Below are positions 32,437 to 52,172 of a stretch of DNA of 64,000 bases, piece by piece. The stretch covers positions 62,001-126,000 of the forward strand of contig NW_020844976.1 of NCBI RefSeq assembly GCF_003704095.1, written 5' to 3'. Both the position numbers and the translations under genes were made by a program. Below the pieces are notes generated by a model. It was not told the DNA's origin and did no database searches. It saw only the letters and a list, made by a program, of their open reading frames with translations. How positions within the stretch are numbered: the stretch's first letter is position 1; every line of letters begins with the position of its first letter. The DNA comes from Pocillopora damicornis (taxonomy: Eukaryota).

Positions 32437-35400
32437 TTAAGTTCCTCTGATGCCCAGGGCTTGTTCCAGCTCGGCTCTCTTCTGTTGTACCTGAATTATA
32501 TTAACAAAAAGAAATTCAGAACTTTGGCTCTGCAAATTGACAACTACAAAGCATTCTTCTGTGTCATAAGGTGCAAATACTACGAAGAGCAGTCTACGAA
32601 AACAATTTTCAGAGTGCCCTAATAATAATCGTTTGGCCTGAACAGATTAAAAGTTTTTGGGTGATCATTACCTTTCCATAAAAGTAGCGGCAAACTGCTT
32701 CTTGTGACCAGGGAAGATGAAAGAAATCAGCTCTCCGCTCTTCTTCTGGATTTCCGACCACATCAGTCATAACCTGAAAGATGACAGGAATTTCAACACG
32801 TGTCACAGGGAAAACAAAAGGTGCCGCAGGATACCTAACTAATATCACAAAAAGAACAAACTGCAGCCACAAGAAGACCAGCCAATGCCGCACGATAAAC
32901 GAGTGGTGTCACGGAAGAGCCAATCACAGTCACATTATAAAACAACCAATATCTTCTTCAATGAAGATCAACCAGCTCAAAAGAGAGAACTTGAGCACCA
33001 AGCACTCCCACAGTGAGAACAAACACAGTAACCACCGACAAATTTCAGGATACCTATAATAGGCTGAGGTCTTAAATCAACAACATTGCGCAACCTTGTT
33101 GATATATTTACCTTGAGATCTTGACTTTGGGACTGTATCCATTGATTGATAAATTCCTTAAAAACAGATACCAAGGATATGTGTCAGTGCTACAAAACAA
33201 AACTGAATACTATAAAAAGAAAAACAACAAGTTGCAACAGCATAGTCATGGCATTTTTTGTATTGTCATGTACCATTTCTCCCAAAAAAGGAAAAGTGTT
33301 TCATGAAATTGTTTCATACGTAACAGAGCAGTATACTCACTGGAGGATCTCTTGCAAACCCAAGAAAGAATTCCCGGTTAATCTTCAACTGATTGATTGT
33401 CTCAACTGTCTCATAAATCTGCAAAACAAAAAAAAACAAAAAAAAAACAAAAGGAATGATTCAGAAACTTAATTTCAACGGCAGTTTAGCAAGAGTAAAA
33501 ACTAACGATACTGTTGGGTTTATTTTTAACTCTTCAGCTCAATGATGGGAAACTAAAAAATCTCAGCTCACCTTGTTGTCATATGCAGTGATCTCATTCT
33601 GACTTGCAGTAGAAAGAAGAAAAGACTGCATTTGAGCCTTGAGCGTGTCATCCTTCAAAAAGAAATAATTTCAGAAATTATTGAAACAGCAAACCAAGCA
33701 CAACATTTGTAAACACAACCAGTTGATTTATAGATACATAATTTGTAAAAAGGTTGCTGTTACTTAAAGGTTTTCTAAGAACTTATCCCAATAATATCCT
33801 TACATTATCTGGCAAAAAGGTAACAAGAGTACTCAAACTCAAGTGGAAGTTGTTATCTTGATCTAACACCAAATTGTCTGAACTAATGTACAAGGAAATG
33901 TGTAGCAGTAGAGAGAATTAACAATCATATCTTGAGAATTAAAGGATTTAACCTACAATAAAACTTACACGACTAATTACAACAAGAATGACATAACATA
34001 TGATAATAGAGAAAGGTTTCCTTAGAAGTGATTAACATGTAACTGTAACTTCTCCCAAACATATCCTTACATTATCTAGCAACAACAGAGAGGAGAATCA
34101 ACTATCAGATCTTGAGAATTAAAGGGTTAAACCTACATTAAAACTTTAACAATTAATTACAGCAAGAATGTCATGACAGATATTATAACAGAGATATGGT
34201 GCTAAGTAAAATAAAACCAAACTGTTTAACTTACAACTTCTACTTCAATGTCATAGCAAGTTGTTCTCTTGTTTTCAGGTGTTTCTTTGCTATGAGGAAA
34301 AGACAACTGATTAAATTAATGATTCAGTAAAATTTGTGCTTGAAAAATTATGCTAAACTATTCCTGTTGTAGTTTGATTACATTAGTTTTCATTTTGTTT
34401 GAAGTTTTGTTCCCATCCATGTTATACAGGAATGGGAAAAAAATTGAAAGATAACCAGTTTGACAACTCCTAAACAAAAAGGAACTACAGAGCTATCACT
34501 TATACCTCAGCTGATGGAGGATACTATAGTTTACCTTATAAGGTGATGAATAACAATGGGATCTGGAGGTAATAACAAGGAACTCAAACGCTGAGGAATC
34601 TCACTAAACTTCATGCGATTACATTCAAAAATCTGAAAGCAAATAACATTGAATCAGTTACAATACCAATGACCAAATTTGATTTAACAAAACTTGCAGA
34701 GTTTTCATGGTATAAAGAATTAAATGCATAGTCATGTTCTCATAGTATTTCTGAGTAGAAATAGGTGGAGATGACTAAAGAGAGTTTGGAAGTTGAACAT
34801 CAGATCTGACCTGCTGAAAGTATCTGTCACAGTTTATGTACTCCCTCTCATGAGAATCTTGCAAGTTGTGACTCTGAAAGTAATTAAAGAAAAAATAACA
34901 TAACCTAAGGTAGCAGAGACAATTTTAAATCTTAATCAAGAGGTTTGGGTTACAACAAAATCTGTTGAAACTGTTTACCCACAGAGTCAAGCTCACCTTA
35001 ATATACTGCCATAAAGCATTGACAATCACCGGCCTTGTTTGAGTGTGAATACCCATAAGCCTTGCTAATCTGGGATCCAGTTTGTACTGTGGAGGCTAAC
35101 AAAACAGTTTATGCTTTGGTTAGTTACAAGGTTATGATACAGTAATCAATTAATTAATTTACTACTGACATCTGATTTATACCTCTTACCTGGTAATCCA
35201 ACAGGAACATGATAGTGCACTTCACATTTTCTTCTCCAGGCCTTTTAACCTTAAATGAGATCAGATGCTTTAAAAAGGGCATTGAAGAGTGATTCAAGAC
35301 TTTTAATCTGACACAGGCAAACTGCTTTTGTTGATGGTGACACTGACTAATGTTTTGACAACCTGAATGGGAGTCTTTATCAGAGTCCACTTGGTTCTGA

Positions 35401-36033
35401 AAATGACTCCAAGTCAATTCATTGAGATGACTGTCATTGTAGATAACAACAGTACTGTAGAGATTGCAAACCAAGAGAAAACATGATCAAAATTTTCCCA
35501 AGAATTTGGAGGTTGCATTGACAATGCTCAAAAACAACATGCAGTAAGAAGTCCTGGACAAAATTCCATACCTGAAAACCATCAGTCTCTTGAGTTGAAC
35601 TGGTGCGATGCCACTGAAAAAAATTAAAAACAAATATACCCTGGATTACTTGCAGTGCTCAACAAACAAATCTTTCTTAGTACTTTCTACTGATCCAATC
35701 TACTGAATATTTCACATTTTGTTTCACCAAATCCAAGATTGTATCACCTTCATCACTGCTATAATGTACCTCAACTAGGTGATTATCTGGCCCATATAAC
35801 TCCCTGTCCAACTCTATCACAAGACTCTTGAAATATGTTGAGAACTTTCGTTTCTGTCTTGGACCATCAGTCTTGGGAGCCTGCATCTGTGTGCATGACA
35901 CATAACCATTTTGGTAAATTCAGGCAAACATTAATTTTTCTTTGTACGGTGAAACCTGTATAAATTATATACCAACTTGCAACCCAAAATTCACATCCCA
36001 AATTTCTCCAGAAAACCAACCTATATACATATC

Positions 36034-36099
<66 letters not shown>

Positions 36100-38576
36100 A
36101 TACATATCATATATCTTTCATGAGCAAATGTAAACTCTAAAATTGAGACTTTCAACAACCCAAATCTACAAGCGTATTTAGCAGACACTTCAAGAGGTTT
36201 TACCATAGAGTTTGAACATCTCTAGGCTAATGGTATATTCAAAACTTCAATATCCAATATCAGGTCCACTGAATTTTATTTATGTGGTACAATTTAATAC
36301 AGTGGTATGTACTAATTATGTACATTGAACTCCACAGACTTTGATGATGCAAAATGCATCTCAGTTTGTTTCCCACCATATCTGTAATTCCATTTATTTT
36401 CAGGAAACTGGTGTAACAAAGCTTACATGAGACAAAAGAGGCTTAGAACATTTGATCCATCAAAGATGTCAGTTACATTTCTGTTTTACTCTGTCACAAT
36501 CTGAAATACTGCTTGTGGTCATTATGCAATTTTCAAGAAGCTATTTTATATGGACACCCCCTTTTCAGCACAAATTAGCAAGGGTTCTGCATGTGTCTGT
36601 TTAAAATGAGTTTCACTGTATCATGCATTTCACACTTTTATCATACACTTGTACCTCCTCTAGAAGACGACCCTCCACTCTCAGCTCCCATGAAGGAACA
36701 ATATTTTCTTCATCCTGGTGTACAAAAGAATGGTTTGAAGAGTTAGATACATTTATTGCTACTTGACTCTTTGATAATCATGCAGCAAATTCATGTTGGA
36801 GGACCAAAAATAAACCATTATATAGCAAAGTATTAGTGTTATGAACCAGATTTCATACTGTGCTATGAAAATGATGCATGCAAATTAAAGCCATTGCAAG
36901 GAAAATTAACAGCTAAGAAATAACAATGCAGCTTCTTTGCTGAGGATAGATTTTAAGATAACTTACTTCATTCTCTGGTCTCGGCACATAAAAGTTTGTA
37001 GTTAAGTAGATTCGCAACTTCTTCTTTTGCTGGAAAAAGGAAACAACAAAAACAAAATTCTCAGTACATTTATCATACTTACAATAATCCTAGTATAAGA
37101 CAAGCAATTTTAATCATTTTGATTATAATGCAGAGTCTATATTTTACTTTGAAACAAAAAAACCCTCCTACCTTCATTGGCCTTTTCAAAGCTTCTTGAA
37201 TGTCTAACCTCTTGCGCATTATGGTTGCATCCAGTTTCCGTTCAAAGGCAAGGAGGTCCATATATGCTTGTGATTCTGGTACAAGATCTCGCACCTGTCA
37301 TGAACACAAAGTTAGTCAACAAGATTTCTTAGCTCCCTTCAGTGACATAAGTTATACAATGACTTCACTTACTCTTTGAGGAAGGATCTTGTCAGCCATC
37401 TTCTTCTTTCTAAAAAGGAAATTATACATCAAGCTTGATTTAAATTTCCACTTTGTTGGAACTGTTAAAACATAAGGTAGTTTTCAGTTAACCCTGTGAC
37501 TCCCAGATATGAAACATTCTCCTTAATGTTGGCCATACAGTAATCACTTGTTACTGTGTGGAGAAGTTCTTTCTTTTTCACTCATGGGAGTTGAAACACC
37601 AAGCAATTCTTGCAAATTGAGTTGCTTTAGTTCAGACTCACTACAAACCTTCTCCTGTTCTTGGCATCCTGTCTCCGCCTTGCCTGCTCCAGTGCAGCAG
37701 CAGCACCTGGTACCAGTCCTGCCCGAGGCACATTAGGACCATAAGGATGTACTCCTGATGTGCCCTGCATGCGCATTGCCATGGCAGTATTTGAACTGCT
37801 GGCTGGACGCTGAAAAATCACGAAAGTGATTGAAACTAAACTCAACCATGCAAAATTCATTAAAAATATCACAGGCACATTCCAGGGCAAACATGGATAT
37901 TCAATTTATATTTTTTATCATGAATGTTGAGACCATAATATAAAGTATATGATATGCTAAATTATACATGCATTTTGATTGGTTCTTACTAATCATCTCT
38001 AGGAGGAGACACAGAGATGATGTCACCATCAAACACATGTTGCTTTTTATCAATATATCATTTAAACAAATAGATTTTAAGTAGCCTTGGATCTGTACAG
38101 TAATAGGTCACAGAAGACATCAAAATGTGGTAAGAACATCAGTGATAAACTCTATTACTGAACAGACTCTCGGCAACGTGGAATCTACTTGTAAGAAAAA
38201 GAAGTGGATTTGAACAACTTGAAAACTCATAATCGGAACTTATTTGTGCTACCATTCGTTGATTTTCAAAAAAATGTCCTCCAAAACTTGGTTTCCTTGT
38301 CATCGCTGCCGATCGGTAAAAGGGTTTCCTTATAACTTTCAGCAATCAACAGAAATCGTCAACGATCAAATGGAAACAAAGCTTTGGAAACAGACATGAT
38401 CGTCCTCGTGCTTGTTTCAGAAAGATTTTAATTCGTGTTTTATAGTCAATGTGATGTTATCGGTTTAAAGGAAAGCAAAAGGAATCAAATAGTAAAGAAC
38501 TCACCGAAATTCCATATGGTGATTGTTGGAACTGAGAGCGCTGATACATGGAGGACTGCTGCGGGTTATTTGCCAT
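32437..38576 (-). CDS. SMARCD1: SWI/SNF subunit SMARCD/BAF60 (SWIB domain), ~18 coding exons
   Basis: Exons include 38576-38505, 37809-37649, 37409-37373 ([12 protein letters not shown]), 37294-37172 ([41 protein letters not shown]), 37029-36967, 36714-36655 ([12 protein letters not shown]) and 35880-35770 ([28 protein letters not shown]). Later exons read [55 protein letters not shown], and finally [17 protein letters not shown] (32490-32437). Confidence 0.96.
33775..34130. mobile_element. Two tandem partial copies of the piggyBac-like MITE in a SMARCD intron
   Basis: Both end in TCTTGAGAATTAAAGG(A/G)TT(T)AA followed by a duplicated CCTACA..TAAAACTT flank (~33950 and ~34130). This implies a local duplication. 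Confidence 0.6.
36022..36096. repeat. (TA)n microsatellite
   Basis: Long ATATAT run in a SMARCD intron. It is absent at the paralogous position (~41830). Confidence 0.95.
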
Positions 38577-38607
38577 TTTCTGCATTGAAGCAGAAGCTGG
38601 AAAACGC

Positions 38608-38647
38608 GCCGCCATATTGAATGAAGAAAGTTACCCACAATGCAATG
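38608..38647. promoter_or_regulatory. SMARCD promoter motifs: YY1-like GCCGCCATATT and ZNF143/Staf-like TACCCACAATGCAATG
   Basis: They lie 30-70 bp upstream of the SMARCD ATG. The YY1-like motif has decayed to GCTGACATATT in copy 2 (~43300). Confidence 0.5.
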
Positions 38648-40469
38648 CAATTGAGGTAATCTTCACAATTAAGATACATTTACCTAGCTTTTAGTCCACA
38701 TTTATTGCAGCATAATTTGAATTGATTCAGCTGCGTAATTAACGCTCAACAACCTGAAATTTGACTATCGATTGTTCGACAGATAAAAAAAGCGGGAAAG
38801 TCTCTAAATAATTGTAGCGTCGAGACAGTGGGGGGTATTAAGGGGTTGATTTGGTTTTCTAACTGGATTGACAACGTAATTTAATTGGCCACCAAAGAGA
38901 GTTTCAAAAGCTCTTTGCAGTGGCAAATTAACATGATAATCTTAGTTGATAGAACAAATTTTCCGATTGTTTGGTCTCGCTTCTCTCTGCAAATCATTTG
39001 TGCTTTCAAATCCTAGATTATAAGACACTATAGGGCAAAGGCTCGAATTCCGTCAAAACTTGAAAATTTCAAGCTTCTTTTTAGCAATTCAATCAAATTC
39101 AGACCACCTCTGAGGATCGTTTCACTATTTGTTGTCTTACTGGTCTAAATTAAGTAGGATTTATTGCAGTTAAACACTATTTTTGATTAGATGATGTTAT
39201 TAGAAAAACCATGTCCATTGTCTATTAAAAAAAAACTTTCATCAATGATCAACAGAAATCGGAAGAACAATTGCTTGTAAAAGTTGGTATGTTATGGTGG
39301 AGGACTTAATTTCCAAATTTATTTTCGTTTTTGAATGTTTCAACATATTGTACTCATGCAGTATTGTGCAATAGTAATGCAAACAAAAATCGCCGAATTT
39401 TGTTGATTGTTCCTTCGAAAATTCATCGAACTTTCGTGCGAAAGTTCGTGAAGTTTCTCGCTTGCTCTTCGCGTCACTTCGTCGGAAGAAAGAGCGATGT
39501 TTCTTCGAATTTTCGTTACCGAGCAAAAGTTCGCTATGAAAAGCTTGGGAAATACAAAATAATTCTCAGCGCGACATGCTCGATCTTCAATTCATGTGCT
39601 AAGCACAAAACATGAGACTAAATGCTCTTGGCACGGAACTTCGGGTTTCGAACGCTCGTGCGAACTGCGTTCATCGTGTTTTGATTAGAGCTACGAAGCG
39701 ATTGACAAATTAAAATTTTAGATTACAGAAAGAAGGAGAATTCCAGAAATTATTTGGGAAGCGAGTGTGACAAATGTGTCCAACAAATTAAGGATAGCGT
39801 AAAACAGAAGGGTACATTGACTGGACGACGAAAGACATTGAATTTAGTTGGATAAAATCCTGTACGAAATGTTTCTCGTGCAGAGATTCATGGAACTTTT
39901 TTGAGTAGTTATTGAGCTTTTAGATGTTCCCAAGTTCATGGAAATAGTTCTTGCTCTTTTTAAAATTTGTTTCAATGTAATCAACACCGCCTATGCAAAT
40001 GCCAGATATCGGCGATTTTATACGCTGATCGCGACGATCGGCGAATAAAATCGCCAGGTGTATCGCCAGTTTTATCACCAGTTTTAGCCCACCTTCGTTC
40101 TCACGTGGTCGACAAAGTCACGCTTGTCTCTCTTTTCTTCGAGTTGAAATTTGAAGTTACGAGCTTTGCATCGTTTTGCAGTGGTTAATGCGGTCTCATT
40201 CCTTAGTTTGACTTAAATATTTCTGAATAACATCTACAGTTTTTCCACTCTTTGAGTTAATTTCTAAGACGCGACCTTTGAAGCCGTGGCGTCACGGCGT
40301 CAAGTGCTAGCGACTGATTCTTATGATTCTGGAAGTGTAAGGATAAACACACGTATTTCTTTTTCCACACTCACTTTTTTGTAATCGAAAGCATTTATTT
40401 CACAAGAATACGAGAGATAAGTTTCCCAAGTAAGGTATGTCTTGCAGTAAGATATTTCTGGCCGCTTTG

Positions 40470-40573
40470 TAGCGTGCGTGTAGCCCGTACCCTCCCCCCA
40501 AGGTGAAACGGAAGCGAGGGCACTCCTTCCCCTCGCCTCCGTTTCAGGGGAGGGTATGGCTACACGTAGGCTA
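40470..40573. mobile_element. ~100-bp palindromic MITE
   Basis: TAGCGTGCGTGTAGCCCGTACCCTCCCC...TGAAACGGAAGCGAGGG pairs with CCCTCGCCTCCGTTTCAGGGGAGGGTATGGCTACACGTAGGCTA. TA ends. Confidence 0.7.
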
Positions 40574-41610
40574 ACCGATTTGCTTTCGAACTCGACCCGA
40601 TCTATTGTTTAATTCATCGCCACCGTAGTTCAACGTCCTTCCAAACAAATATTTGTATGTATGCTCTCCTATTAAAAATTTCTTGGTTTAGTGTTTTTGT
40701 GTTCCATGCATATGCATTACCAGTGCGCATTTTTTACACTCAACGGTGCATTGTTTTACTTTAAATTTACTAAACATTGTCAAATATATTGCATGTGATT
40801 CATGCAAAAAGCTGGTTATGGCTTTGACTTGCTACTTGACACTATTTTGTTAGGACTTATACACAAGTTTTCTATCACAATTTTTAAACAAAATTTTTCC
40901 AGCTACCAGAGTTTTACTTCTTTTTATACACTACTTTTTTATATACTACTTTTAATACACTGTATTATTAAGATATTTATAGTACCCTACTTGACTTTTT
41001 ATGGTTATTAAGATATAGATATTTTAAGCATATTTATGAGATATGAAGTGATGTCAAACATCATTCATTTCTCATTGTTTATTGTGTTCCATGCATAATA
41101 TACCCATTACCAATAAATATTTTTTATAATCTATGGTCCATTGTTTTAATTTGCTAAACATTGTCAAATATATCATGGGTGATTCATGCATAAAGCTGGT
41201 TATGACTTTGACTTGCTACAAACTATTGAGTGTAAAACACTTAATTAACAACTGGTAAATAGTAAATGTAGCTGTAATCAGTTATCAAATTAGCCATTAA
41301 AAATAGTTTATATTTGGTGATAAGTGACAATTCAGAATTAATTTTCACACATCTTAATTATAAGTGCATGTATATTTTTTTCTATAAGAAGACATACAGG
41401 AAAAGAAGTCTACCATTCTCCAAATCTCAAAACCAACCCGTTGACAACTTGGTCTAAAAATCCAAGTCTGGCCAGGTTCATTTTCCTTGCCAACCACTGT
41501 TGATAAGGAAAATACATCCTACAATTCACTAATTTCCAAACAATCATTAATCTGCCATCAAATCCTTTAAATCTTCCTTCTTTGTGGTCAGTTGTCCATA
41601 AAGAAAATAA

Positions 41611-43340
41611 AACTCCCTGTCCAACTCTATCACAAGTCTCTTGAAATATGTTGAGAACTTTTGTTTCTGTCTTGGACCATCAGTCTTAAAAGCCTGCATC
41701 TGTGTGCATGGAACAAAACCATTTTAGTAAATTCAGGCAAACATTTACTTTGTACAGTGAAACCTGTATAAAACACACACCAACTTGCTACCCAGAATTA
41801 ACATTCTAAATTTTTCCAGAAAACCAACCTATATTCAGTAGACATCTTTGATGAGCTAATGTAAACTCTAAAATCCAACAACCCAAATCTACAGGCATAT
41901 TAGGCAGACACTTGAAGAGGTTTCACTTAAGAGTTTGAACATCTCTCAGTTAACAGTGTATTCAAAACTTCAATATTCAAACTCAGGTCCACTGATCTTC
42001 ATTTACGTGATACAAGTTAATATAGTGGTATGTATTAATGAAGTACATTGAACTCCAGACTTTGACAGTGCTAAATGTATCTTAATTTGTTTCACACTAT
42101 ATCTTTAATTGCATTTCATTTCAGGAAACTGGGGTAACAGAGCTTACATAGGACAAAAAAGGCTTAGAACATTTGATCCATCAAAGATGTGAATTAAATT
42201 TCTGTTTTACTCTGTCACAATCTGAAATACTGCTTGTGATCATTATGCAATTTACTAGAAGCTGTTTCATATGGACACCCCCTTTTCAGCACAAATTAGC
42301 AAGGGTTCTGCATGTGTCCGTTTAAATGAGTTTCACTGTATCATGCATTTCACACTTTTATCATACACTTGTACCTCATCTAGAAGATGACCCTCCATTC
42401 TCAGCTTCCATGAAGGAACAATATTTTTTTCATCCTGGTGTACAAAAGAATGGTTTGAAGAGTTAGATACATTTATTGCTACTTGACTCTTTGATATTCA
42501 TGCAGCAAATTCATGTTAGAGTACCAGAAATAAACCATCATAGCAAAGTATCTGTGTTATGATGTAGATTTCATGCTGTGCTATGAAAATGATGCATGCA
42601 AATTAATCCCATTGTAAGGAAAATTAACAGCTAAGAAACACCATCACAACTTCTTCACTGAGGATAGGTTTTAAGATATCTTACTTCATTCTCTGGTCTC
42701 GGCAGATAAAAGTTTGTAGTTAAGTAGATTCTCATTTTCTTCTTTTGCTGGAAAAAGGAAACAACAAAAACAAAATTTTCAGTACATTTATCATACTAAT
42801 GATAATCCTCATATAAGACAAGTAATTATAATTATTTTGATTATAATGCATTATAAGGATGTATTCCTTATGTGCCCTGTGTGTGCATTGACATGGCAGC
42901 ATTTGAACTGCTGGCTGGACACTGAAAAATCACAAAAGAGATTGAAAACTAAGCTCAATCATGCAAAATTCATTGAAAATATCACAAGCACATTCCAGGG
43001 CAAACACAAGAGATTTAATTTTTTTTTCTATAAAATAAATTAAAATGTTGAGATCATAATGTCTAATATATGATAAGCTGAATTATACAAGCATTTTGAT
43101 TGGTTCTTACTTATCATCTATAGGAGGACAGACGTAGAGATGATGTCACCATCAAACATGTTGCTTTTTATCATATAAAACAAAATATTTTTTATGTTGC
43201 CTTGGTTCTGTATAATAATAGATCACAGAAGACATCAAAATATGGTAAGAACATCGGTGACAAACTCTGCTGCGCCTCGTGAGCAGAAGTTGAAAAACGC
43301 GCTGACATATTGGATGAAAATTTACCCATAATGCAATGCT
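41611..43340 (-). pseudogene. SMARCD partial duplicate pseudogene (remnants of exons 2, 5, 6 and 7; exons 1, 3 and 4 deleted; 3' half absent)
   Basis: The exon 6 copy reads DEKNIVPSWKLRMEGHLLDE versus [20 protein letters not shown]: 5 substitutions, all non-synonymous. Deletions correspond to ~37130-37745 and ~38155-38590. Confidence 0.9.
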
Positions 43341-43425
43341 ACAGGTTGTTTCCTGATCTTTCGTCAGTTCCAACTCGGGTAACTTCGGAAAGATCCGGTC
43401 AATAGATAGACATGCGTTCGGGATT

Positions 43426-43455
43426 CCGGAAGAAAGCGGAAGTGACATATAAAAA
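43426..43455 (+). promoter_or_regulatory. Core promoter of the VOPP1-like gene: paired ETS sites and a TATA box
   Basis: CCGGAAG AAA GCGGAAGTG ACA TATAAAAA, about 90 bp upstream of ATG 43544. Confidence 0.6.
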
Positions 43456-43543
43456 TATCCTCTTACGTGCGTCTAAGTGAGTGGTAACATTCCTGTCTTG
43501 TCCCGTACAAGAGCGTTCGCAAGTTTGCTGTTGGCTTGACATT

Positions 43544-45781
43544 ATGAAGATCGCTTTCGTTTGTCTTATATTTCTGACAGTTTTCATTGAGGTAATCTTC
43601 ACAATTAAGATACATTTACCTAGCTTTTAGTTCACACTTATTGCAGCATGATTTGAATTTGTTCAGCTGCGTAATTAGGGACCTAAAGCAGTCAGGACGG
43701 CAACGCTGAGAAGGACTTGGATTAAAAAAATGAATTTCTGCCTTTAATTAGAAGGTAAAATTTCCGCACAGCCCCATACTACATTATGAATTCAGTTCTT
43801 GAATAGAGAAAACAATGACAAAAACAATACATTTCCATTGGGAAAACAGATTTGTTTTACAATAGTATGGGGCTGTGCGGAAACTTTACCAATTAGAATT
43901 TCAAAAATGGCTGCATGTGTTTACCGTCTCATACGGCGCCAGTCCTCGTTGCCGTCGTCGTCGTGGTTTGCTCAAGATCGCTAATAGCGCCCAACAACCT
44001 GAAATTTAACTATCGATTGTTCGACAGATGACTAGAGCGGGCAAATTTCTAAAGAAATTGTAGCGACGAGACTGTAGGGGGTATTACAAGACAATTTGGT
44101 TTTTCAACCGGGTTGACAATGAAATTTAAATGGCCACCATAGAAAGTTTTAAAAGCTCTTTGCGGTGGCTAATTTACATGATCATTTCAGTTGATAAAAC
44201 AAAATTTTCGATTGTTTGGTCTCGCTTCTCTCTGCAAATCATTCTAGATTATAAGAGACTATAGGGCAAAGATTCGAATCCCAACAAAGCCTGAATGTTT
44301 TCAAGCTTCTTTTTAGCAATTCAATTATAATACAGACCACCTGTGAGGCTTGTTTCGCTATTTGTTGTCTTTCTGGTCAAAATTGAGTGGGATTTGTCAC
44401 CTAAACACTATTTTTGATTAGATGATGTTATTAGAAAAACCGTATACATTGTCTATTGAAAAAACTTTTAGCAATGATCAACAGAAATCTGAAGAACAAT
44501 TGCTTGTAAAAGTTTTGTATGTTATGGTGGAGGATTTAATTTCCAAAATTATTTTCGTTTTTGAATGTTTCAACATGTTGTACTTATATTCATGATTCTG
44601 GTCATCATCATATAATCATTAACATCATCATCATTATAATAAATAGTTAAGATTATTCTTGATGTTATCACCATTATTAGTATAATAAATGTTATTATTA
44701 CACATAATATTCTCATTTCATTGACATTGAAGTCCAATCTCACAAGAAAATGTTCTTAAATGATTTTGTATCAGTCCAATGGCCTCAGATGTTCATACTC
44801 AAGGTACAGGGGTGGCAGGTACACCACTACCTATTACAGGTGGGCAATGTTTAATTTTTTTCACATTATTTGTAAACTTTAAAAGAAATAAAGTAATGTG
44901 ATATGCTTTGATGTTTTGTTTCTATTTATTTGTTTATTTCAAAAGTGAAAATATGAGTCAATGTGAATATGGATAACTCCTATTTGCTGCTATTTTTTTC
45001 ACATAGTTGAAAACACTTGATGTTTTATTTGTCAGTCAAAGACCTTTAACAACAGCATTTCTGTTCTTCTTTTAGATAACTAAAACTGACTAAATTGGGA
45101 AGAAACATGTAAATTAGTGACATTTACATAATGTGCTAGCATTCATGATGATCTTTTGCATTTTGCTGTGAATTAATTTTTTTTTCAATTTTTGCTCCAT
45201 AGCTGTGCTAACAATGAATACTGTTGTGGATCTCGAAGTTGTTGTACATATGTTTATACAAGATGGTACCTCTGGTAAGTGCAAATCAAAATTATTCTGA
45301 ACCTACCTCATTGCATAATTTCTTTGACAAAATGATGAACAGGATGAACCTGACAACATTTTTCCAGGTTGTCTTGTAGATAAAGTTAGTTCACATTTTC
45401 ATTAAAATAAGACATTTTGCATATTGCTCAATTCCTAATAATTTGTTTTCAATTCAAAGGACGGGCATTGTGGCCACTTTTGTGATTAGTTTTATCATTT
45501 GGTGGTACTATCGCTATCGCTATCGTCGCGCACATCAAGTAGTTGTAGCCCAGGTCCGACCCTCTCAGGCTGTGCATACCACAGTCACTGAGAGTGTGAT
45601 GAGGGTACCTGCTGCCTACCCTGTGTACCCCCCACCAGGTCAAGCCACATTCATGCCAGGCACAGGGAATACCCAGTATACAGCATACCCACCACAAGTT
45701 TATGCTTATCAGGATCCACCACCACCATACACAAGTGCTCCTATGGTGAAACAAGGTGCTTTTGTGAGCACTTCTTCTTAG
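43544..45781 (+). CDS. VOPP1/WBP1-like (Shisa-like) single-pass membrane protein with PPxY motif, 4 exons, 168 aa
   Basis: Exons 43544-43591, 44775-44839, 45203-45274, 45460-45781 join in frame. Signal peptide MKIAFVCLIFLTVFIESNG, six-Cys domain LRCSYSRYRGGRYTTTYYSCANNEYCCGSRSCC, WYLW plus a TM helix, a basic stop-transfer segment, and a Pro/Tyr-rich tail with DPPPPY. Confidence 0.87.
43678..43981. mobile_element. PIF/Harbinger-like MITE in VOPP1-like intron 1
   Basis: TTA|GGGACCTAAAGCA...GACGGCAACG ... CGTTGCCGTC...TGCTCAAGATCGC|TAA. The empty site is visible in copy 1 at ~38740 (GCGTAATTAACGCTCAAC). Confidence 0.75.
43754..43890. mobile_element. Nested 137-bp MITE with 28-bp TIRs and an 8-bp TSD
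   Basis: TIRs GGTAAAATTTCCGCACAGCCCCATACTA / TAGTATGGGGCTGTGCGGAAACTTTACC. TSD AATTAGAA at 43746-43753 and 43891-43898. Confidence 0.9.
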
Positions 45782-47563
45782 CTTAGTCATTCAAGGCTCA
45801 GAGCTTAAACATGTTTTAGCTGCAGTGGTGAATAAGAAAAAAAATAGCAATTACATTTGTAGCAAAAGTTGCCAATTTGGCAACCTGCTGGTCTTGAAGT
45901 AAGTTGTGACATTTTTGTCGCTTAAAGTTGAGTAACTTTGTAATGTCATATTGCATAAAATGTCCCTTTTTCATTTTTTGTTTTCTGAGAGAAGTTAGCA
46001 AGGGTATTGTTTTAGCAAGAAAAGTTTGGTGATCCTGATGATGGTCACTATTTTGTTAAGACTTATACACAAGTTTTTTAGCGCAATTTTTTTAACAAAA
46101 TTTTTCCAGCTACCAGAATGTTACTTAAGACTTATTGTATCATATGTTTACTTTCATAAAAGATGAGCCTAGAGCCCAATTATAATTCTTTGGATGAATC
46201 CTTAGCTGGGAACCATTAACCTCTCAAGTCATGGGTATCATTAGTGCATAACTTACTCAGTATCTCACCCTACAAACTGATGACAAGAAAACAAAAATCA
46301 CACATACCTACCCTTTGGAGATGCAATAAGGCAAACTTATACATTTCGGCAGGAATTTTAGGAGTGCAAATGAGTGAAGTCTCAAAAACTACAGTGCGAA
46401 TCCCAAAGGGGGACAGGGTTGATATTTTCCTAGCATCTTGAAAATTAGTCTTGTCATATCAGTTCACTGATGGATGATTTTCTACTCACTAAGAATAGAT
46501 TTTTTAACACACTGTATTATTTAGATGTTTATAGTAACCTTCTTAGAAGGTGTTAGATTATTTCTGACATTAAGATATAGATATTTTAGGCACATTTATG
46601 AGATATGAAGTGATGTCAAACATCATTCATTTTTCATCTATAGTGATCCATGTATATGCATTACCACTAAGCATTTTTAACACTCAGTGATGCATTGCTT
46701 TACTTTAAATTTACTTAACTTTGTCAAATACATTGTAAGTGATTCATGCAAAAAGTTGGTTATTACTTTGACTTGCTTCAAACTGCTGAGTGTAACACAC
46801 TTAACTAAACAACCAATAAATAGTGTGCATAGCTGTAATCAGTTATCAAATTAGCCATTAATAATAGTTGATTTTTTGTGACAAGTGATGATTCAGAACT
46901 AATTTTCACTTGTTATATTTATAAGTACATGTATATCTTTTTTATAGAAAGACATTGTGGGAAGAGAAGTCTACCATTCTCCAAATCTCAAAACCAACCC
47001 TTTGACAACTTGAGAAAAGAACTGCATTCCTTTTCAGTGTCTAAAAATTCAAGTCTGGCCAGGTTCATTTTCCTTGCCAACCACTGTTGATGGGGACAAT
47101 ACTTCCTACCATTCACTTATTTCCAAACAATCATTAATCTGCCATCAAATCCTTTCAATCTTCCTTCTTTGTGGTCAGTAGTCCACAAAGCTCCCATGCA
47201 TCTCCTCCCATCTGCCCCTATCTTTAGCAACTGGACACAACTCCTCTCATGCATCCATCTCTGAGAGTCCCTCTTTTTACAAAATCTCTGCCACTATGTT
47301 TTCCTAGGGCTTGTGACCTTTATTTTCACAACAGATACCATGCTGGGGCTGAGAAACAGTGGTACTTCTTTTGTAAATAAAGTAACCACCTCCACCATCT
47401 ATTCATCACCATCACTCAGACAAACAGTCACTTTTATCTCCACGAGTAGATTAAATTACCACAACATCCCAAACTAATTTTACTGACGATACTCTTCATC
47501 TGTACTAAAGTAACAAGTGAGCCAAAGGAAAAAGTTTTATCATGAGATGTCAAGAGCTAAGAA

Positions 47564-50500
47564 CTATTTTTGTTCCTTCTTGAGTCTCTCCTCAGCTTCT
47601 GAGGCATGAGATCTTGTTGACATCACCTCCCATTCCTGAATCATTTTTTCTTTGAGGAATTCACCATGTGGTTTGCCAACATTTATTGGAAGCAAAGCAG
47701 CATATACTGGAGTCTCTGCACCTTAAAAAAATCAATTATGGATAATGGTTGAATTATTTTATCAACAGAAAAGCATTATCATGCAACACAGTATGCATGA
47801 CAAACTTTCAGTTGGTGATGAAATTAATTCCCAAAGGTTTGTTTGCTTGTGATGTAAATGAAAGAAAGGCATAGATCACCTTCAATTTCAACAAGTGAGG
47901 GAATGAAAAAAGTATTCAAACTACACATGTAAGATAACGAGAGGAGGTAGATGTGGGGAAAATAAAAATTCAGTTGTACCTTCCTCAGGAGATTTTGTTG
48001 CTTTTGGTCCAGCCATGTCTGTGCGTACCCAGCCAGGATCACACTGCAGAATAACGAAAAACATTTTTTAGAAATTGATGAGCTCAAACCTCACTGATGT
48101 CAACAACTTAACCCTCTCACTGGAAGATCTTGGTGATTCAGAGAATTTTGTATTGGGTCAACTAAAAATCCCCTGGATTATATTTGTCTTTATTCTCATC
48201 ACTTAACTGTTTAATATTGTTTTGATACTGTAAGGAGAAATTCTGTCTTGGTCACTGATGTGAGTTAAAGGGTTAAGGAACAAAAGGTAACAAAAGCTCA
48301 CAAAAAACAAAAAAAACACTGCAAGGAAACTGAAAATCATTTCAACACTACTGCTGCACTAAGATAAGTGTAACTTCATAAAAAATCAAGACTGAGTTTA
48401 CATCCAGGACAAAAACTGTCAATTTCATGTGTCCTTTATATGTAAATGTGTAAAATGTTCCCATTGGTTTCATTTTACAAACTTCAGGCATCCATCCCAA
48501 CCTCAACAATTAACATAGCAATAGCATATAGCATATATAACATAGCATTCAATTTAATTTTCATTAATTTTAGTTTTTCCTGCCACAATCATTTGTAAAC
48601 TATCTTATATTAGCCCTTTAGAACCTCCAAGTAACCAGCATCTGACTTTGCCTTGCAGCATTACTGTTGAATCTTCATTAAGATCATGAGAATAAAAGGA
48701 ATAATTGCAAATCTAAGAGGCTTAGATTGTTTACAAAATTCCCCTTGTCATCACCAAAGGGAATGTATAGAGAACAATATGGAGAATATATATAATTTGT
48801 AGAGGGTTAAAACTATGTGGTTGTCATTGTCAGGATGGGGGGAGTGGAAGGTCACACCAAGTCAATTATGAAAAAGACACAGGAATTGACAAAGGAAATA
48901 AACATTGTAAATTAAGATGTCTGTAAATTAATTGTCAATTGCAAATTATATTATGATGATTACATTTCAAATCACTTACAGCATTGATAAGAATGTCCTC
49001 TCTAGAATCTTGTAATGTATTCCTTGCTAGAATCTTGGTTAAAGCAATTATTCCTATATGGGACATTCCATAGGCTGGAAGGCAGAAAGAAAATTAGATT
49101 CAGGAATGCCCAGTTGTTATCAGTTATTACATAGAGACTTAAAATACTGTTTGAGAGTTTGCTTTACCAGAGGTTGACCATCCCTTCTGTGAGTGTGTAC
49201 CATCCTTGACATCTCTGGAAATACATTGTATTAAAAAGAGGAAATATTCACTACAAGAAACAAATGTCCTGTGGTAATATATAGATTTTATTCTGCTTGT
49301 CGTGACCATTTTTGCCATTTATAACACTTGCAAAATTGTATTCCTCACTTCAAATGAATTCTAATTATTCTTATCAACAACATTTACTTGTTGAGTACAT
49401 GCCATTATGGATAAAAAGCTAAAAGCCAGATTTTAATTACCAAAGTAAAGAAACATTTTATCACAGTAACACATTTAACTTTTGTTACAGTATACAAATT
49501 GAGAACACAATGGTTACCAGATAGCACATTCACTTAAAGTTCTTGTTTGATAAAGCAAATTAATAGATCAATTGATCAAGCACTTACTTAACAAACTGAT
49601 CCATCAAGTTAGCAAGATTTTCTTCGGTTAATGTTGGAGAAGAGAACCTCTTCTGAAGGTCTTCTGACAGCTGAGCCAAACCTCCTAAATGGGAGGAAAT
49701 ATTCACCAACCTGGAAAATCAAAGCAAAGATACTCTCTTAGTATCAATAATCCTGAAAGACCTGGAAGTAACAACTGGAAAGACAATTTTCAATATTTAC
49801 AATGGGGACAAACTGTTAGATGGAAAGGGGAGGGGAGGGCAGGACTGGTGCCTCTCTTTTCTATCAAGTGCAGTATTTCTATGCCCTGCCCCAATTTCTT
49901 GTAGTAAAAAAATGTAACACCCCCTCCCTCTCCCTCCTCTATGGCAAGCAATAGCCATTCTTAACTTTATGTTTGATGTGCATCCTACATACTTAACTAG
50001 GATCAGCAATTTAAAAGCATGATATGTCTGAGTAGGTAATTATTCAGATAGAGCGTAGAATTTTCAGGTGTGACATGCAATATTGAAAGATGCAAATTGT
50101 CTTACTCTGTTGTTTGATAGAGGTTAAAGGAGGCTAACAGCAGTAAATAATTTGATAAATGTATCTTAAACCAACCAAGCAAAGTACCATTGGTTTCCTT
50201 TCTGCATGGGAGCTTATGATCCTTACTAACCTTGCATGTGGTTTTAAAATTGGTGACAGTGCTCTGCACACATTAAGCGTACCATGAAAGTTTGTCTGGA
50301 TAGTCACTTCAGCTTGTTCTGGAAAAGGAACTGTAGATGCCCGCTAATTAATATTCAAAAACAAAAAAAACAAATATCAATACTTCACTTTTCAGTAGAT
50401 TTATCTAAGAGGGACATCAGTTTTTTAACAGTTGATGTAGGGACATAGGATAACCCTTTTATCCCTCGGAATGATTAACATCTTATTTCTCCTTACAGAG

Positions 50501-52172
50501 CTGCCCTTAATCAAGCATTTAGGTAATGAGAATAAAGGTAATGATCACTTATGAAAGGGGCTCTAGATCATAAAAAAAAATTCTCCATGTCAATACCATA
50601 GAATATTAGGGTGTAAAGAGGGTTTAACACCTAGCATTATAGCTTAATACCAAGCTTATGATGTGTCCTCAGGTATAGATGCTTTACAGGCACCAATGCT
50701 GAAATATATGTAATACACAATAATTCTGAGCTTGATTCTCAAGTATTTCTCCTCACAACCTAACCCTATCACTCCTAAGATCTCATTAGTAATTCTCCTT
50801 ACTGTATACCATACAATTCTTATGATTTTTCTTCAGAGAATTTGGTATTTGATCAACTTATAATTTACTTATAAGTTATAATATTTTCCTTTATTTCTCA
50901 TCACTTGTCCACTTGATATTCTATTGATATGGAAAGGAAAAATTCTGTCTTGATCATTTGCAGGAGTTTTAGGGTTAACGCTTGTTTCAACCCACCTTAA
51001 AAGCTATCCCGGCATTATTTACAAGAAGATCCAATCCACCATATTGCTCCATGAGATGTTTCTTTATTCTCTCAATGCTTTCTGGTGAAACAATATCCAA
51101 CTGATGAAATACAGGTGAAGCACCTTCAGTGCTTAGTTGTTTGACAGCTTCCAGTCCTCTTTGTTCATCTCTTGCTAAAAGCAAAGTTGTCAGCCAGTCA
51201 AAATGATACAAAACCTTCTGCAGGTAAGGATTATAGATTGACCTAAAAATTAGGTTTCTGATTTTTGGCTGGAAATCTTGTTAAAGTGAAGTACTGTATG
51301 CATCAGATTGGGCTGCTACTCTGATCCACATCAGGTGTTACCAAGTATAAGGAGTCTCATGAATGAGACCAAACAACAAACTTTCCCTCATCCTCTTATC
51401 TCCTTAGCACCAGCCTCAGCATGTCACACAATGCCCCCCCCTCCTCCCCCCGGCAGTAAATCTTAAAAAAATGTCCATACAGGAGAATCCTCAGCCTCCA
51501 GTACGTGAGCTGGGTGTCCTGTGGACTGATCATCCCTAAAAACCATCAGATAACAGAAAACCAGTGGACCTATAATTTTTTTTCTCTGTGGGCAATGTTG
51601 CCCTTCATCTGGATTTACAGAGTATAATGCAGTTGTGCAAAAGCCAAAAGAATGTTTAGGAACCAACCAAATGAAAAGTGCCCATTATTTAATTTCCATT
51701 CCCTAATTAACCCTTTTCACGCCCATGAATGACCAAGAGAGACTTTCTCCTAACAATATCACCTAAGGGATTGTTAGTCGATCCAATACCACGTCCTCCA
51801 AATGAACATTATAGGAATTGTATGGCCGACAGTAAGGAGAATTACTAAAAATCAGATCTTAGGAGTGAAAAGGTCAAGAAATTATTATTTTGTTTAGGTT
51901 AAGGTTATTTTAAGAAGAACTGACCACCTGTTAAAATAACAGTTCCAGAAAATTCTCTACACAACTTTTTGACTATAGCAAATCCTATTCCCTTGTTAGC
52001 ACCGGTAACCTGCAGATTGAATGAAACTTCGTGTTTTGTAGTTTAGAATACTATCAACAAAAAATGAGATTCTCGAGAAGGCTTTAAACTTAACGAATCA
52101 AACTGAATTGCCGAAAAGATTTCCTTATGTAAAGAGTTAAAAAGAATCACTACTCACAACCGCAACTCGCAT
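47564..52172 (-). CDS. Carbonyl reductase 1-like SDR (CBR-B) with atypical YxxxH active site, 9 exons, ~291 aa
   Basis: Exons 52172-52158, 52009-51928, 51174-50996, 50343-50231, 49710-49588, 49214-49168, 49074-48980, 48043-47980, 47721-47564. Motifs: TGANKGIG, LVNNAG, LVNISS, AYGMSHIG, CDPGWVRTDMAG. Confidence 0.9.
48108..48276. mobile_element. piggyBac-like MITE (related subfamily)
   Basis: TTAACCCTCTCACT...GAGTTAAAGGGTTAA. Similar elements lie at ~48610-48811 and ~50450-50628. Confidence 0.65.
50761..50978. mobile_element. piggyBac-like MITE (related subfamily)
   Basis: TAACCCTATCACTCCTAAGATCTC...GGAGTTTAGGGTTAA. A partial copy lies at 53474-53605. Confidence 0.7.
51707..51877. mobile_element. 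piggyBac-like MITE (related subfamily)
   Basis: TTAACCCTTTTCAC...GGAGTGAAAAGGTCAA. Shares CAGTAAGGAGAATT with the element at 54545-54733. Confidence 0.6.

What the first reader, a model, noticed from the sequence alone, without database searches (positions are those of the whole stretch)
35798..47183. Head-to-head SMARCD / VOPP1-like pair uncoupled by tandem duplication and reciprocal deletions
Seen in the sequence: a ~5.6-5.8 kb unit is tandemly duplicated. Copy 1 keeps SMARCD exon 1. It lacks the ~250-bp block holding the ETS/TATA promoter and signal-peptide exon of the VOPP1-like gene, with only ATTGAG|GTAATC surviving at ~38650, and it lacks that gene's exons 2-4. Copy 2 keeps the whole VOPP1-like gene but has lost SMARCD exons 1, 3 and 4, and its YY1-like motif has decayed. 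Merging the copies reconstructs an ancestral bidirectional promoter with the two ATGs about 280 bp apart. They are now about 5 kb apart, each with its own part of that promoter. Inference: this is duplication-degeneration acting on a promoter, which could free the two genes from co-regulation without changing gene number.
Basis: partly seen in the sequence, partly recalled or inferred. Interest (0 to 1): 0.8.

Follow-up and report, generated by a model that had tools for sequence, protein, structure and literature searches.

The report
Coral promoter split by duplication
In Pocillopora corals an old 5.7-kb tandem duplication pulled apart two genes that once shared one small two-way promoter, and related coral lineages now carry three further states of the locus, one of them re-fused, which gives a natural test of what a shared promoter does.

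Summary
Copy 1 (35794-41603) and copy 2 (41607-47190) are 81-95% identical. All the diagnostic junctions recur with no mismatches in contigs from three independent DNA studies and in many Tara Pacific scaffolds, so this is not a haplotig.

The outgroup coral Desmophyllum has the SWIB gene (SMARCD) and the VOPP1/WBP1-like gene head-to-head, unduplicated, with the two ATGs 243 bp apart.

- SMARCD was never fully duplicated. The boundary cuts exon 7, so the copy-2 fragment could never have made a protein.
- Only the VOPP1-like gene was truly redundant, and the copy next to SMARCD decayed.
- The 245-bp promoter deletion in copy 1 is late and lineage-specific. Other Pocillopora haplotypes ("type C") still have both promoters complete.
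- The copy-2 promoter still fires both ways. A spliced RNA runs through the SMARCD remnant exons and across the junction.

New here: single-copy head-to-head haplotypes ("S") occur in at least four samples. They are recombinants, copy-1-like on the left and copy-2-like on the right, with one crossover at 43409/43419 inside the promoter. The best reading is that they collapsed from the duplicated state rather than being ancestral.

Uncoupled regulation remains untested.

The parts
35794..41603 (.). Copy 1 of the tandem duplication. It holds the functional SMARCD 5' exons (part of 7, then 6 to 1), a truncated promoter, and the gutted VOPP1-like copy.
   Evidence: collinear blocks at 81-95% identity to copy 2; independent DNA contigs with no mismatches
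41607..47190 (.). Copy 2. It holds decayed SMARCD 5' remnants, the complete two-way promoter and the intact VOPP1/WBP1-like gene.
41603..41607 (.). Duplication junction (J2). The tail of the VOPP1-like downstream region is joined to the middle of SMARCD exon 7, with about 3 filler bases and no long homology.
   Evidence: three-way alignment of the boundaries; contig 41539-42189 in X1, X4 and X6; the junction-crossing ORF is listed in 206 index blocks of the collection
32437..38615 (-). Functional SMARCD (BAF60-type, SWIB domain) gene. E1 is about 38506-38615, E2 about 37648-37808, E3 about 37370-37410, E4 37172-37294, E5 about 36966-37030, E6 36655-36713 and E7 about 35770-35886. Further exons run down to the stop near 32437. 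The SWIB match is at 34997-35089.
   Evidence: and (PF02201, 37.9 bits; exon-by-exon tblastx to the Desmophyllum 462-aa SWIB gene, 82-100% aa identity; RNA joint at the E1 donor, 38505)
38648..38650 (.). Deletion scar J1 in copy 1. The 245 bp holding the VOPP1-side promoter, 5'UTR and signal-peptide exon are missing, and only ATTGAG|GT of that exon survives. About 35 bp of original sequence remain upstream of the SMARCD ATG.
   Evidence: the scar is bridged by DNA contigs 38116-38679 in three studies; the deletion is absent in type C haplotypes
39355..40698 (.). Patchwork of dispersed repeats that occupies the place of VOPP1-like exons 2-4 in copy 1.
   Evidence: parts recur on many contigs at 70-94% identity; no exon remnants in the window; a decayed exon-4 remnant survives at this place in type C; no Pfam hits
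41607..41701 (-). Copy-2 remnant of SMARCD exon 7, cut by the junction. It is the start of the last, read-through exon of the remnant RNA.
42375..42436 (-). Copy-2 remnant of SMARCD exon 6. The frame is open, with 5 amino-acid changes, and it is spliced into the remnant RNA.
42686..42747 (-). Copy-2 remnant of SMARCD exon 5, spliced into the remnant RNA. Type B haplotypes delete it (42518-42731).
42853..42920 (-). Copy-2 remnant of the 5' end of SMARCD exon 2, with an in-frame stop. It abuts the 608-bp deletion scar at 42850/42853 and is skipped by the remnant RNA.
43111..43184 (-). Upstream exon of the copy-2 remnant RNA. It lies in former SMARCD intron 1 and uses a cryptic GT donor at 43110.
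43279..43308 (-). Copy-2 remnant of SMARCD exon 1. The ATG is kept at 43308-43306, the YY1-like motif has decayed, and the roughly 430-bp deletion scar follows at about 43269-43283.
43309..43543 (.). The complete 235-bp divergent promoter, with ETS-like CCGGAAG / GCGGAAGTG and TATAAAAA on the VOPP1 side. The crossover that made the single-copy haplotypes lies between 43409 and 43419.
43544..45781 (+). Intact VOPP1/WBP1-like gene: E1 43544-43591, E2 44775-44839, E3 45203-45274 and E4 45460-45781. All introns are GT-AG and the frame is compatible with 168 aa.
   Evidence: 72% aa identity of E4 to the Stylophora 'WW domain-binding protein 1-like'
43678..43981 (.). High-copy repeat inserted into copy-2 intron 1 after the duplication (target-site repeat TAAT(T)A). 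It is absent from copy 1 and shared by the single-copy haplotypes.

Best explanation
Ancestral state (shown by outgroup). In stony corals SMARCD on the minus strand and a VOPP1/WBP1-like membrane-protein gene on the plus strand sat head-to-head on a promoter of about 240 bp.

Duplication (shown). In the Pocillopora stem a non-homologous tandem duplication copied a 5.7-kb unit. The unit ran from the middle of SMARCD exon 7, through exons 6 to 1 and the promoter, to about 1.4 kb past the VOPP1-like stop.

Consequences (structure shown, order of events inferred).
- Only copy 1's SMARCD 5' half is continuous with exons 8 onward, so SMARCD had to stay functional in copy 1.
- The copy-2 SMARCD fragment was non-coding from birth. 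It then lost exon 1, part of exon 2, and exons 3 and 4.
- The VOPP1-like gene was fully duplicated. The copy-1 gene was the one that decayed, through repeat insertions and deletions.
- As a result the two working genes now have 4.9 kb between their ATGs, each behind its own copy of the promoter.

Later divergence among lineages (shown).
- Type C keeps both promoters whole.
- The window's lineage (types A and B) deleted the 245-bp VOPP1 half from copy 1.
- S haplotypes are single-copy and head-to-head again.

Origin of S (inferred, about 85%). S arose by unequal recombination between the two promoter copies of a type-C-like chromosome, which removed the roughly 5-kb junk segment.

Activity of the copy-2 promoter (inferred from one spliced contig whose library type I could not check). 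It still works in both directions and gives a spliced non-coding RNA through the SMARCD remnants.

Whether separation changed co-expression of the two genes is not known.
For: - Duplication map.
- Independent confirmation of every junction: three DNA studies, no mismatches; ten Tara scaffolds fetched, the junction ORF listed in 206 index blocks, L024 100% identical over 16 kb.
- No second locus in the genome.
- Outgroup arrangement.
- Boundary inside exon 7.
- Age: in both ML trees the copy-1 and copy-2 clades have 100/100 support and lie 0.11 and 0.127 substitutions per site apart, while diversity within each clade and in the flanks is at most about 0.01.
- Type C keeps the 245-bp block, VOPP1-like exon 1 and a decayed exon-4 remnant in copy 1.
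- S haplotypes occur in four contigs from four samples, one of them a 90-kb scaffold, and a fifth short contig (L016) carries the same marker ORF.
- S nests inside the copy-1 clade on the left and the copy-2 clade on the right.
- Of 43 fixed copy-1/copy-2 differences, S carries the copy-1 state at the first 20 and the copy-2 state at the remaining 23, except one site (43554) in three of the four contigs.
- S shares the repeat insertion that entered copy 2 after the duplication.
- Remnant RNA: P0006/L027 joins exon a, E5', E6' and E7' at canonical minus-strand GT-AG sites. It carries copy-2-specific bases and runs about 310 nt past the junction at about 100% identity. An RNA-run contig at 42684-43591 has about 10 times the background depth.
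Against: - The polarity of S rests on a roughly clock-like rate in introns and on one shared repeat insertion. No outgroup could be aligned in the introns.
- The promoter mosaic alone could also arise if S were ancestral and each copy had simply conserved its functional half.
- L016 (673 nt) reads copy 1, then copy 2, then copy 1. It is either a gene-conversion tract or an assembly chimera, so some exchange between the copies besides one crossover is possible.
- L027 switches to the copy-2 tail paralogue after about position 600, which is probably a k-mer chimera. I could not confirm that its run is an RNA library.
- The RNA splice joints at 41699>42375 and 42433>42684 could be true SMARCD mRNA laid on the paralogue, because copy-1 exons 5-7 lay outside the stretch I chose.
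- I could not test whether Stylophora or other pocilloporids have the duplication. The look-up of the Stylophora protein failed.
Confidence: 0.8

Rival explanations
1. The single-copy S haplotype is the original unduplicated arrangement. It has persisted beside the duplicated haplotype as a very old polymorphism shared across species. Ordinary recombination in heterozygotes keeps its left arm like copy 1 and its right arm like copy 2.
For: An unrooted three-taxon comparison cannot place the root. The promoter mosaic would also be expected if each copy conserved only its functional half. The Tara Pocillopora species show some introgression (PMC11332039).
Against: The polymorphism would have to last about ten times the depth of the sampled Pocillopora diversity (0.11-0.13 against at most 0.01). 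S carries the repeat insertion that entered copy 2 after the duplication. In the two trees that can place it, S falls inside the shallow diversity of the duplicated haplotypes, weakly beside C_L022 in the left flank (51/0) and sister to two type C haplotypes in the copy-1-only block 37140-37740 (87/87). The switch at 43409/43419 is sharp, with 20 of 20 sites on one side and 22-23 of 23 on the other, which is what one crossover gives.
Confidence: 0.08
2. Separating and partitioning the promoter released SMARCD and the VOPP1-like gene from co-regulation, and this change in regulation is the biologically meaningful, possibly selected, outcome.
For: The two genes now have separate promoter copies 4.9 kb apart. 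In the window's lineage, copy 1 has lost the ETS/TATA half and copy 2 has lost the YY1-like motif. The head-to-head pairing is conserved in Desmophyllum, so its break-up is a real change.
Against: There is no expression comparison. The outcome needs no selection: SMARCD had to stay in copy 1, and loss of either VOPP1-like copy was an even chance. The partitioning deletion is late and missing in type C. The copy-2 promoter still fires both ways. The locus has reverted to head-to-head in the S lineage without obvious harm.
Confidence: 0.2
3. Assembly artefact. The two copies are haplotigs, or a collapsed or mis-joined repeat, wrongly placed in tandem.
For: The assembly is fragmented (4,393 contigs) and corals are heterozygous.
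Against: The copies differ by 11-13%, far above allelic divergence. The junction and all indel scars are reproduced with no mismatches in contigs from three other DNA studies and in Tara scaffolds of 50-116 kb from other colonies. Word depth is the same over both copies.
Confidence: 0.01

Closest known systems
Partial-gene tandem segmental duplication followed by pseudogenisation, or reciprocal gene loss after duplication of a gene block (described for yeast whole-genome duplicates; from my own knowledge)
   Same: A block of two genes is duplicated, one copy of each gene survives, and the survivors lie in different copies. Gene number stays the same but adjacency is broken.
   Different: Here the block is 5.7 kb and holds one whole gene plus one truncated gene. 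The loss is therefore forced for SMARCD and free only for the VOPP1-like gene. What gets separated is a shared 240-bp promoter.
Duplication-degeneration-complementation (DDC, regulatory subfunctionalisation; from my own knowledge)
   Same: Complementary degenerative losses in two duplicates, including complementary deletions in the two promoter copies of the window's lineage.
   Different: DDC concerns sub-functions of one gene kept in two copies. Here no gene is kept in two copies, one duplicate was non-functional at birth, and the complementary promoter deletions are late and not universal (type C).
Conserved bidirectional (divergent) promoters of animal genes, which carry ETS/GABP-type and YY1-type motifs (motif enrichment from my own knowledge; general properties in PMC3403606, PMC2670823)
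   Same: Two unrelated genes on opposite strands, ATGs 235-243 bp apart, conserved between Pocillopora and Desmophyllum. There is a YY1-like motif over one ATG and ETS-like GGAA motifs on the other side.
   Different: Transcription start sites were not mapped here. The TATA-like box on the VOPP1 side is not conserved in Desmophyllum.
Collapse of tandem duplications by unequal crossing-over (non-allelic homologous recombination), as in classical Bar reversion in Drosophila (from my own knowledge)
   Same: The S haplotype equals the left arm of copy 1 plus the right arm of copy 2, with a single switch point and loss of exactly one repeat unit.
   Different: The only crossover position that restores both genes lies in the promoter. 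The revertant therefore rebuilds a working bidirectional promoter as a hybrid of two copies that had diverged by about 12%.
Pervasive tandem gene duplication in coral genomes (Noel et al. 2023, PMC10236652)
   Same: A tandem duplication in a Pocillopora genome.
   Different: That work concerns amplified, retained gene families. This unit adds no gene and is not an immune-gene family. I found no mention of this locus.

Membership tests
SMARCD / BAF60 (SWI/SNF subunit with SWIB domain) | SWIB/MDM2 domain (PF02201) | tested here: met
   Exon 34997-35089(-) scores 37.9 bits against a cut-off of 25. The Desmophyllum orthologue is marked PF02201.
SMARCD / BAF60 (SWI/SNF subunit with SWIB domain) | Full-length collinearity with a SMARCD-type protein | tested here: met
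Exon-by-exon tblastx to the Desmophyllum 462-aa SWIB gene gives 15 collinear matching exon segments at 78-100% aa identity, from the ATG to the C-terminal exon; the stop-containing last exon (..ALGIRGT*) is matched.
WBP1 / VOPP1 family (Pfam WBP-1, PF11669) | Match to PF11669 above the gathering score | tested here: inconclusive
   The Stylophora orthologue P0003 scores 24.2 bits (E 5.6e-5) against a cut-off of 28.1. The Desmophyllum orthologue and window exon 4 alone give no hit. Database names are 'WW domain-binding protein 1-like' and 'Vesicular, overexpressed in cancer, prosurvival protein 1'.
WBP1 / VOPP1 family (Pfam WBP-1, PF11669) | Architecture: signal peptide, short Cys-rich segment, one transmembrane helix, Pro-rich tail with a PPxY motif | tested here: met
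   Read directly from the exon translations: MKIAFVCLIFLTVFIE; CANNEYCCGSRSCC; IVATFVISFIIWWYY; PPPPY. No signal-peptide or membrane predictor was run.
Bidirectional (divergent) promoter pair | Two genes on opposite strands with starts less than 1 kb apart | tested here: met
   ATG-to-ATG distance is 235 bp (the copy-2 remnant ATG to the VOPP1 ATG), 240 bp in S haplotypes and 243 bp in Desmophyllum. In the window's functional pair the gap is now 4,928 bp, so the present working pair no longer meets the definition.
Bidirectional (divergent) promoter pair | Transcription in both directions from the shared region | tested here: inconclusive
   For the copy-2 promoter: the plus-strand exon 1 has RNA-contig cover, and a spliced minus-strand RNA (L027) begins within 150 bp of the old SMARCD ATG. 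No start sites were mapped, and the contigs are unstranded.
Duplication-degeneration-complementation (DDC) | Both duplicates functional at birth, with complementary loss of sub-functions preserving both | tested here: not met
   The duplication boundary lies inside SMARCD exon 7, so copy 2 never held a complete SMARCD. Neither gene is preserved in two copies.
Collapse of a tandem duplicate by non-allelic homologous recombination (for the S haplotype) | A single-copy product that is a mosaic of the left arm of copy 1 and the right arm of copy 2, with one switch point | tested here: met
   Trees. At 43 fixed differences S reads copy-1 state at the first 20 and copy-2 state at the remaining 23, bar site 43554 in three contigs, with the switch at 43409/43419. 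S shares the copy-2 repeat insertion.

The most novel reading that the evidence does not exclude
Closely related Pocillopora lineages carry a natural allelic series at one conserved bidirectional promoter. The states are shared (S, re-fused by recombination), duplicated but complete (C), and duplicated and partitioned (A/B). The state measurably changes how tightly a chromatin-remodeller subunit (SMARCD) and a membrane adaptor (VOPP1-like) are co-expressed. The leftover half-gene would have been recruited as the promoter's non-coding divergent partner.
Probability: 0.25. Interest if true: 0.65.

Novelty: new member of a known kind. Interest (0 to 1): 0.5.

Why it matters
How much a shared bidirectional promoter actually couples its two genes, and why such pairs are conserved, is usually studied with reporter constructs or correlations across many genes.

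Here one conserved pair exists in four natural states in near-identical genetic backgrounds. Flanks differ by about 1%. Hundreds of colonies of these corals have public metagenomes and metatranscriptomes from Tara Pacific. The coupling hypothesis can therefore be tested directly by genotyping the locus and comparing expression.

The locus is also a clean worked example of three things:
- A partial-gene tandem duplication fixes which copy must survive.
- A still-active promoter turns a dead gene fragment into a spliced non-coding RNA.
- Unequal recombination can rebuild a working hybrid promoter from copies that had diverged by about 12%.

For annotation, the copy-2 SMARCD remnants and the exon-1 scar in copy 1 should not be called as genes.

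Tried and rejected
- **Haplotig or assembly artefact:** rejected.
- **Chimeric metagenome assembly as the origin of the S contigs:** rejected. The two copies share no exact run longer than about 10 nt in the 60-bp overlap where a graph jump would have to occur. The same arrangement recurs in four separately assembled samples, one of them a 90-kb scaffold.
- **The Stylophora locus:** the look-up of protein P0003 found no record, so I could not test the nearest outgroup genus.
- **Look-up of the SMARCD exon-1 ORF:** nothing on record.
- **Search with the junction-crossing ORF for more distant carriers:** only Pocillopora-level hits came back. The age of the duplication relative to other pocilloporid genera stays open.
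- **RNA splice joints as proof of copy-2 transcription:** I first read them that way, then downgraded them. Copy-1 exons 2 and 5-7 lay outside the laid stretch, so true SMARCD mRNA contigs can land on the paralogue. The E1-E2 joint was visibly laid that way. The stronger evidence is L027.
- **L027 beyond about position 600:** it switches to the copy-2 tail paralogue. I treat that as a probable assembly chimera and do not use it.
- **Pfam on ORFs of the copy-1 filler (39245-41008):** no hits.
- Exons were searched by reference only. The only joined step was a local check that the exon phases give an open frame.
- **Organism:** its name is an inference. The nearest named proteins are pocilloporid, and an assembly with 4,393 scaffolds is listed among the coral genomes in PMC10236652.

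Full report
**1. What the window is**

The window is G000:C1611:62001-126000 of a 234-Mb assembly in 4,393 contigs. The nearest named relatives of the proteins encoded here are from the pocilloporid coral Stylophora and the stony coral Desmophyllum. Hundreds of Tara Pacific coral metagenome contigs match at 96-100%. Treating it as a Pocillopora genome is an inference, not a label given by a tool.

**2. The observation**

A self-comparison gives two collinear copies, 35794-41603 and 41607-47190, in blocks of 81-95% identity.

Exon-by-exon comparison with the Desmophyllum SWIB gene, plus the Pfam SWIB hit, places SMARCD on the minus strand:

| Exon | Coordinates |
|---|---|
| E1 | about 38506-38615 |
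| E2 | about 37648-37808 |
| E3 | about 37370-37410 |
| E4 | 37172-37294 |
| E5 | about 36966-37030 |
| E6 | 36655-36713 |
| E7 | about 35770-35886 |
| later exons | down to the stop near 32437 |

The left boundary of the duplication (35794) falls inside E7.

The VOPP1/WBP1-like gene is on the plus strand in copy 2: E1 43544-43591, E2 44775-44839, E3 45203-45274 and E4 45460-45781. All introns are GT-AG and the exon phases are compatible with 168 aa.

- Copy 1 lacks the 245 bp at 43341-43585 and keeps only ATTGAG|GT of VOPP1-like exon 1.
- Copy 2 lacks about 430 bp holding most of SMARCD E1. It also lacks 608 bp holding the rest of E2 plus E3 and E4.
- The GCCGCCATATTG motif over the SMARCD ATG has decayed in copy 2.

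Two corrections apply. The ancestral ATG-ATG distance is 235-243 bp, not 280 bp. Copy 2 also retains more than stated: the ATG with about 10 codons, 68 nt of E2 with a stop, open E5 and E6 remnants, and part of E7.

**3. It is not an artefact**

Logan contigs from three independent DNA studies cover four diagnostic places with no mismatches:
- the J1 scar (38116-38679);
- the duplication junction (41539-42189);
- the 608-bp scar (42748-43242);
- the copy-2 promoter (43219-43615).

An ORF that crosses the junction is listed in 206 index blocks of the collection. Ten Tara scaffolds of 50-116 kb were fetched, and one of them (L024) is identical to the window over 16,153 bp. The genome holds no second locus. 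The copies differ by 11-13%, far beyond allelic variation.

**4. The ancestral state**

In Desmophyllum pertusum (L004) a 462-aa SWIB gene on the minus strand and the VOPP1-like gene on the plus strand are divergent neighbours. By my exon mapping the two ATGs are 243 bp apart. The YY1-like motif and several promoter stretches align. There is no tandem duplicate. An adh_short gene lies downstream, as it does in the window.

**5. What the duplication did**

The junction shows no long homology, only about 3 filler bases, so the origin was non-homologous.

Because the boundary cuts E7, copy 2 received an incomplete SMARCD that could never make the protein. SMARCD therefore had to remain in copy 1.

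Only the VOPP1-like gene was truly redundant. In the window, copy 1 has no trace of exons 2-4, and dispersed repeats fill the space.

This is forced loss plus free loss, not complementation between equal duplicates.

**6. Haplotype diversity**

The ten duplicated scaffolds fall into three types.

| Type | Loci | Difference from the window |
|---|---|---|
| A | L023-L026 | Same structure as the window |
| B | L017, L019, L021 | Extra 214-bp deletion (42518-42731) that removes the E5 remnant |
| C | L018, L020, L022 | Copy 1 keeps the whole 245-bp block, an open VOPP1-like exon 1 (MKIVFVCLIFLAVFIE) and a decayed exon-4 remnant |

All three types share the copy-2 scars.

**7. Single-copy haplotypes**

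Looking up proteins called on related contigs gave scaffolds in which the copy-1-type SMARCD 5' region runs straight into the full promoter and a copy-2-type VOPP1-like gene. The marker ORF is on five contigs from five samples. Four of these are S in structure, including a 90-kb scaffold. The fifth, L016, is the mosaic described under caveats in section 9.

ML trees of an intronic left block and an intronic right block each show two clades with 100/100 support, 0.11 and 0.127 substitutions per site apart. S sits inside the copy-1 clade on the left and inside the copy-2 clade on the right. All crown and flank diversity is about 0.01 or less.

There are 43 sites in 43284-43677 where all copy-1 and all copy-2 sequences differ. 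S has the copy-1 state at the first 20 and the copy-2 state at the last 23. One site (43554) is an exception in three contigs. The switch lies between 43409 and 43419.

S also carries the high-copy repeat that was inserted into copy-2 intron 1, with a target-site repeat, after the duplication.

The simplest reading is one unequal crossover between the two promoter copies of a type-C-like chromosome. That crossover would delete the junk segment and rebuild a hybrid working promoter.

The alternative is an ancient polymorphism with recombining flanks. It cannot be excluded without a rooted intron tree. I give it about 8%.

**8. The copy-2 promoter still works in both directions**

A protein found with the junction ORF (P0006, 87 aa) is the translation of E5', E6', E7' and the junction tail joined together. 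It carries the copy-2-specific residues.

Its contig L027 maps as follows:
- 43184-43111, then
- 42747-42686, then
- 42436-42375, then
- 41701 onward, across the junction to about 41290.

All splice sites are canonical GT-AG on the minus strand. Identity to the window is about 100%, apart from 2 mismatches in the exon-6 remnant (96.8% to the window, 100% to the type A locus L023).

An RNA-run contig also covers 42684-43591 at about ten times the background depth.

**9. Caveats**

- L027 turns into the copy-2 tail paralogue after about 600 nt, which is probably an assembly chimera.
- I could not check the library type of L027's run.
- The splice joints may come partly from true SMARCD mRNA laid on the paralogue.
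- L016 (673 nt) carries the S marker ORF and the same switch point but returns to copy-1 type after the exon-1 donor. It is either a gene-conversion tract or an assembly chimera.

**10. What is not shown**

No data here compare co-expression of the two genes between haplotypes. The start sites of SMARCD in the window's lineage are unmapped, and only about 35 bp of original upstream sequence remain there. The claim of uncoupled regulation is therefore still an inference.

The spliced protein models were not sent to any search. Exons were searched by reference only. The single joined step was a local frame check. No contig looked human. No stretch of N occurs in the window.

**12. Verdict**

The mechanisms involved are all known: tandem duplication, pseudogenisation and unequal crossing-over. 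The case is unusually complete and directly testable with public data.

Noticed in passing
window 27969-28603 (both strands read as open): The ORFs here combine Gly-Pro collagen-like repeats, poly-proline runs and short Cys-rich motifs (for example [18 protein letters not shown]). From my own knowledge this looks like a cnidarian minicollagen gene of the stinging-cell capsule.
   Followed up: no
window 47570-52000 and L004 13487-22471: Short-chain dehydrogenase (adh_short, carbonyl-reductase-like) genes lie downstream of the VOPP1-like gene in both Pocillopora and Desmophyllum. Synteny therefore extends beyond the gene pair.
   Followed up: partly
window about 38000-38150 and 43067-43270; also 43678-43981: These stretches are very high-copy dispersed repeats. 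Word depth is 100 to 500 times the neighbouring sequence in all runs, and dozens of copies lie elsewhere in the genome. They break short-read contigs and cause most of the odd 'joints'.
   Followed up: partly
L016:1-673 (Tara scaffold): This contig is a mosaic: copy-1 type, then copy-2 type from 43419 to at least 43577, then copy-1 type again after the exon-1 donor. It is either a gene-conversion tract between the two promoter copies or an assembly chimera through the identical 46-nt start of intron 1.
   Followed up: partly
window 38650-38741 versus 43586-43677: The first 46 nt of VOPP1-like intron 1 are identical in the two copies, and the first 92 nt are 95% identical, against 81-89% for most of the unit. 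This points to local constraint or gene conversion.
   Followed up: no
L017, L019, L021 (type B), equivalent to window 42518-42731: A further 214-bp deletion in copy 2 removes the exon-5 remnant that the remnant RNA uses in other haplotypes. That RNA must be spliced differently, or be lost, in this lineage.
   Followed up: no
L027:600-1312: The transcript contig changes from the copy-1 tail to the copy-2 tail paralogue. It could be a k-mer chimera with the antisense of the VOPP1-like 3'UTR, or a sign of a further rearranged haplotype.
   Followed up: partly
window 36027-36112: A (TATA/TATAC)n microsatellite sits in a SMARCD intron. It differs in length between haplotypes and interrupts the alignments there.
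   Followed up: no
run X15, window 38650-38989 and 39181-40874: This RNA-run coral seems to have sequence other than 38354-38649 in front of 38650, perhaps the undeleted block. Yet its copy-1 filler is like the window's, not like type C. That hints at a fifth haplotype type.
   Followed up: no
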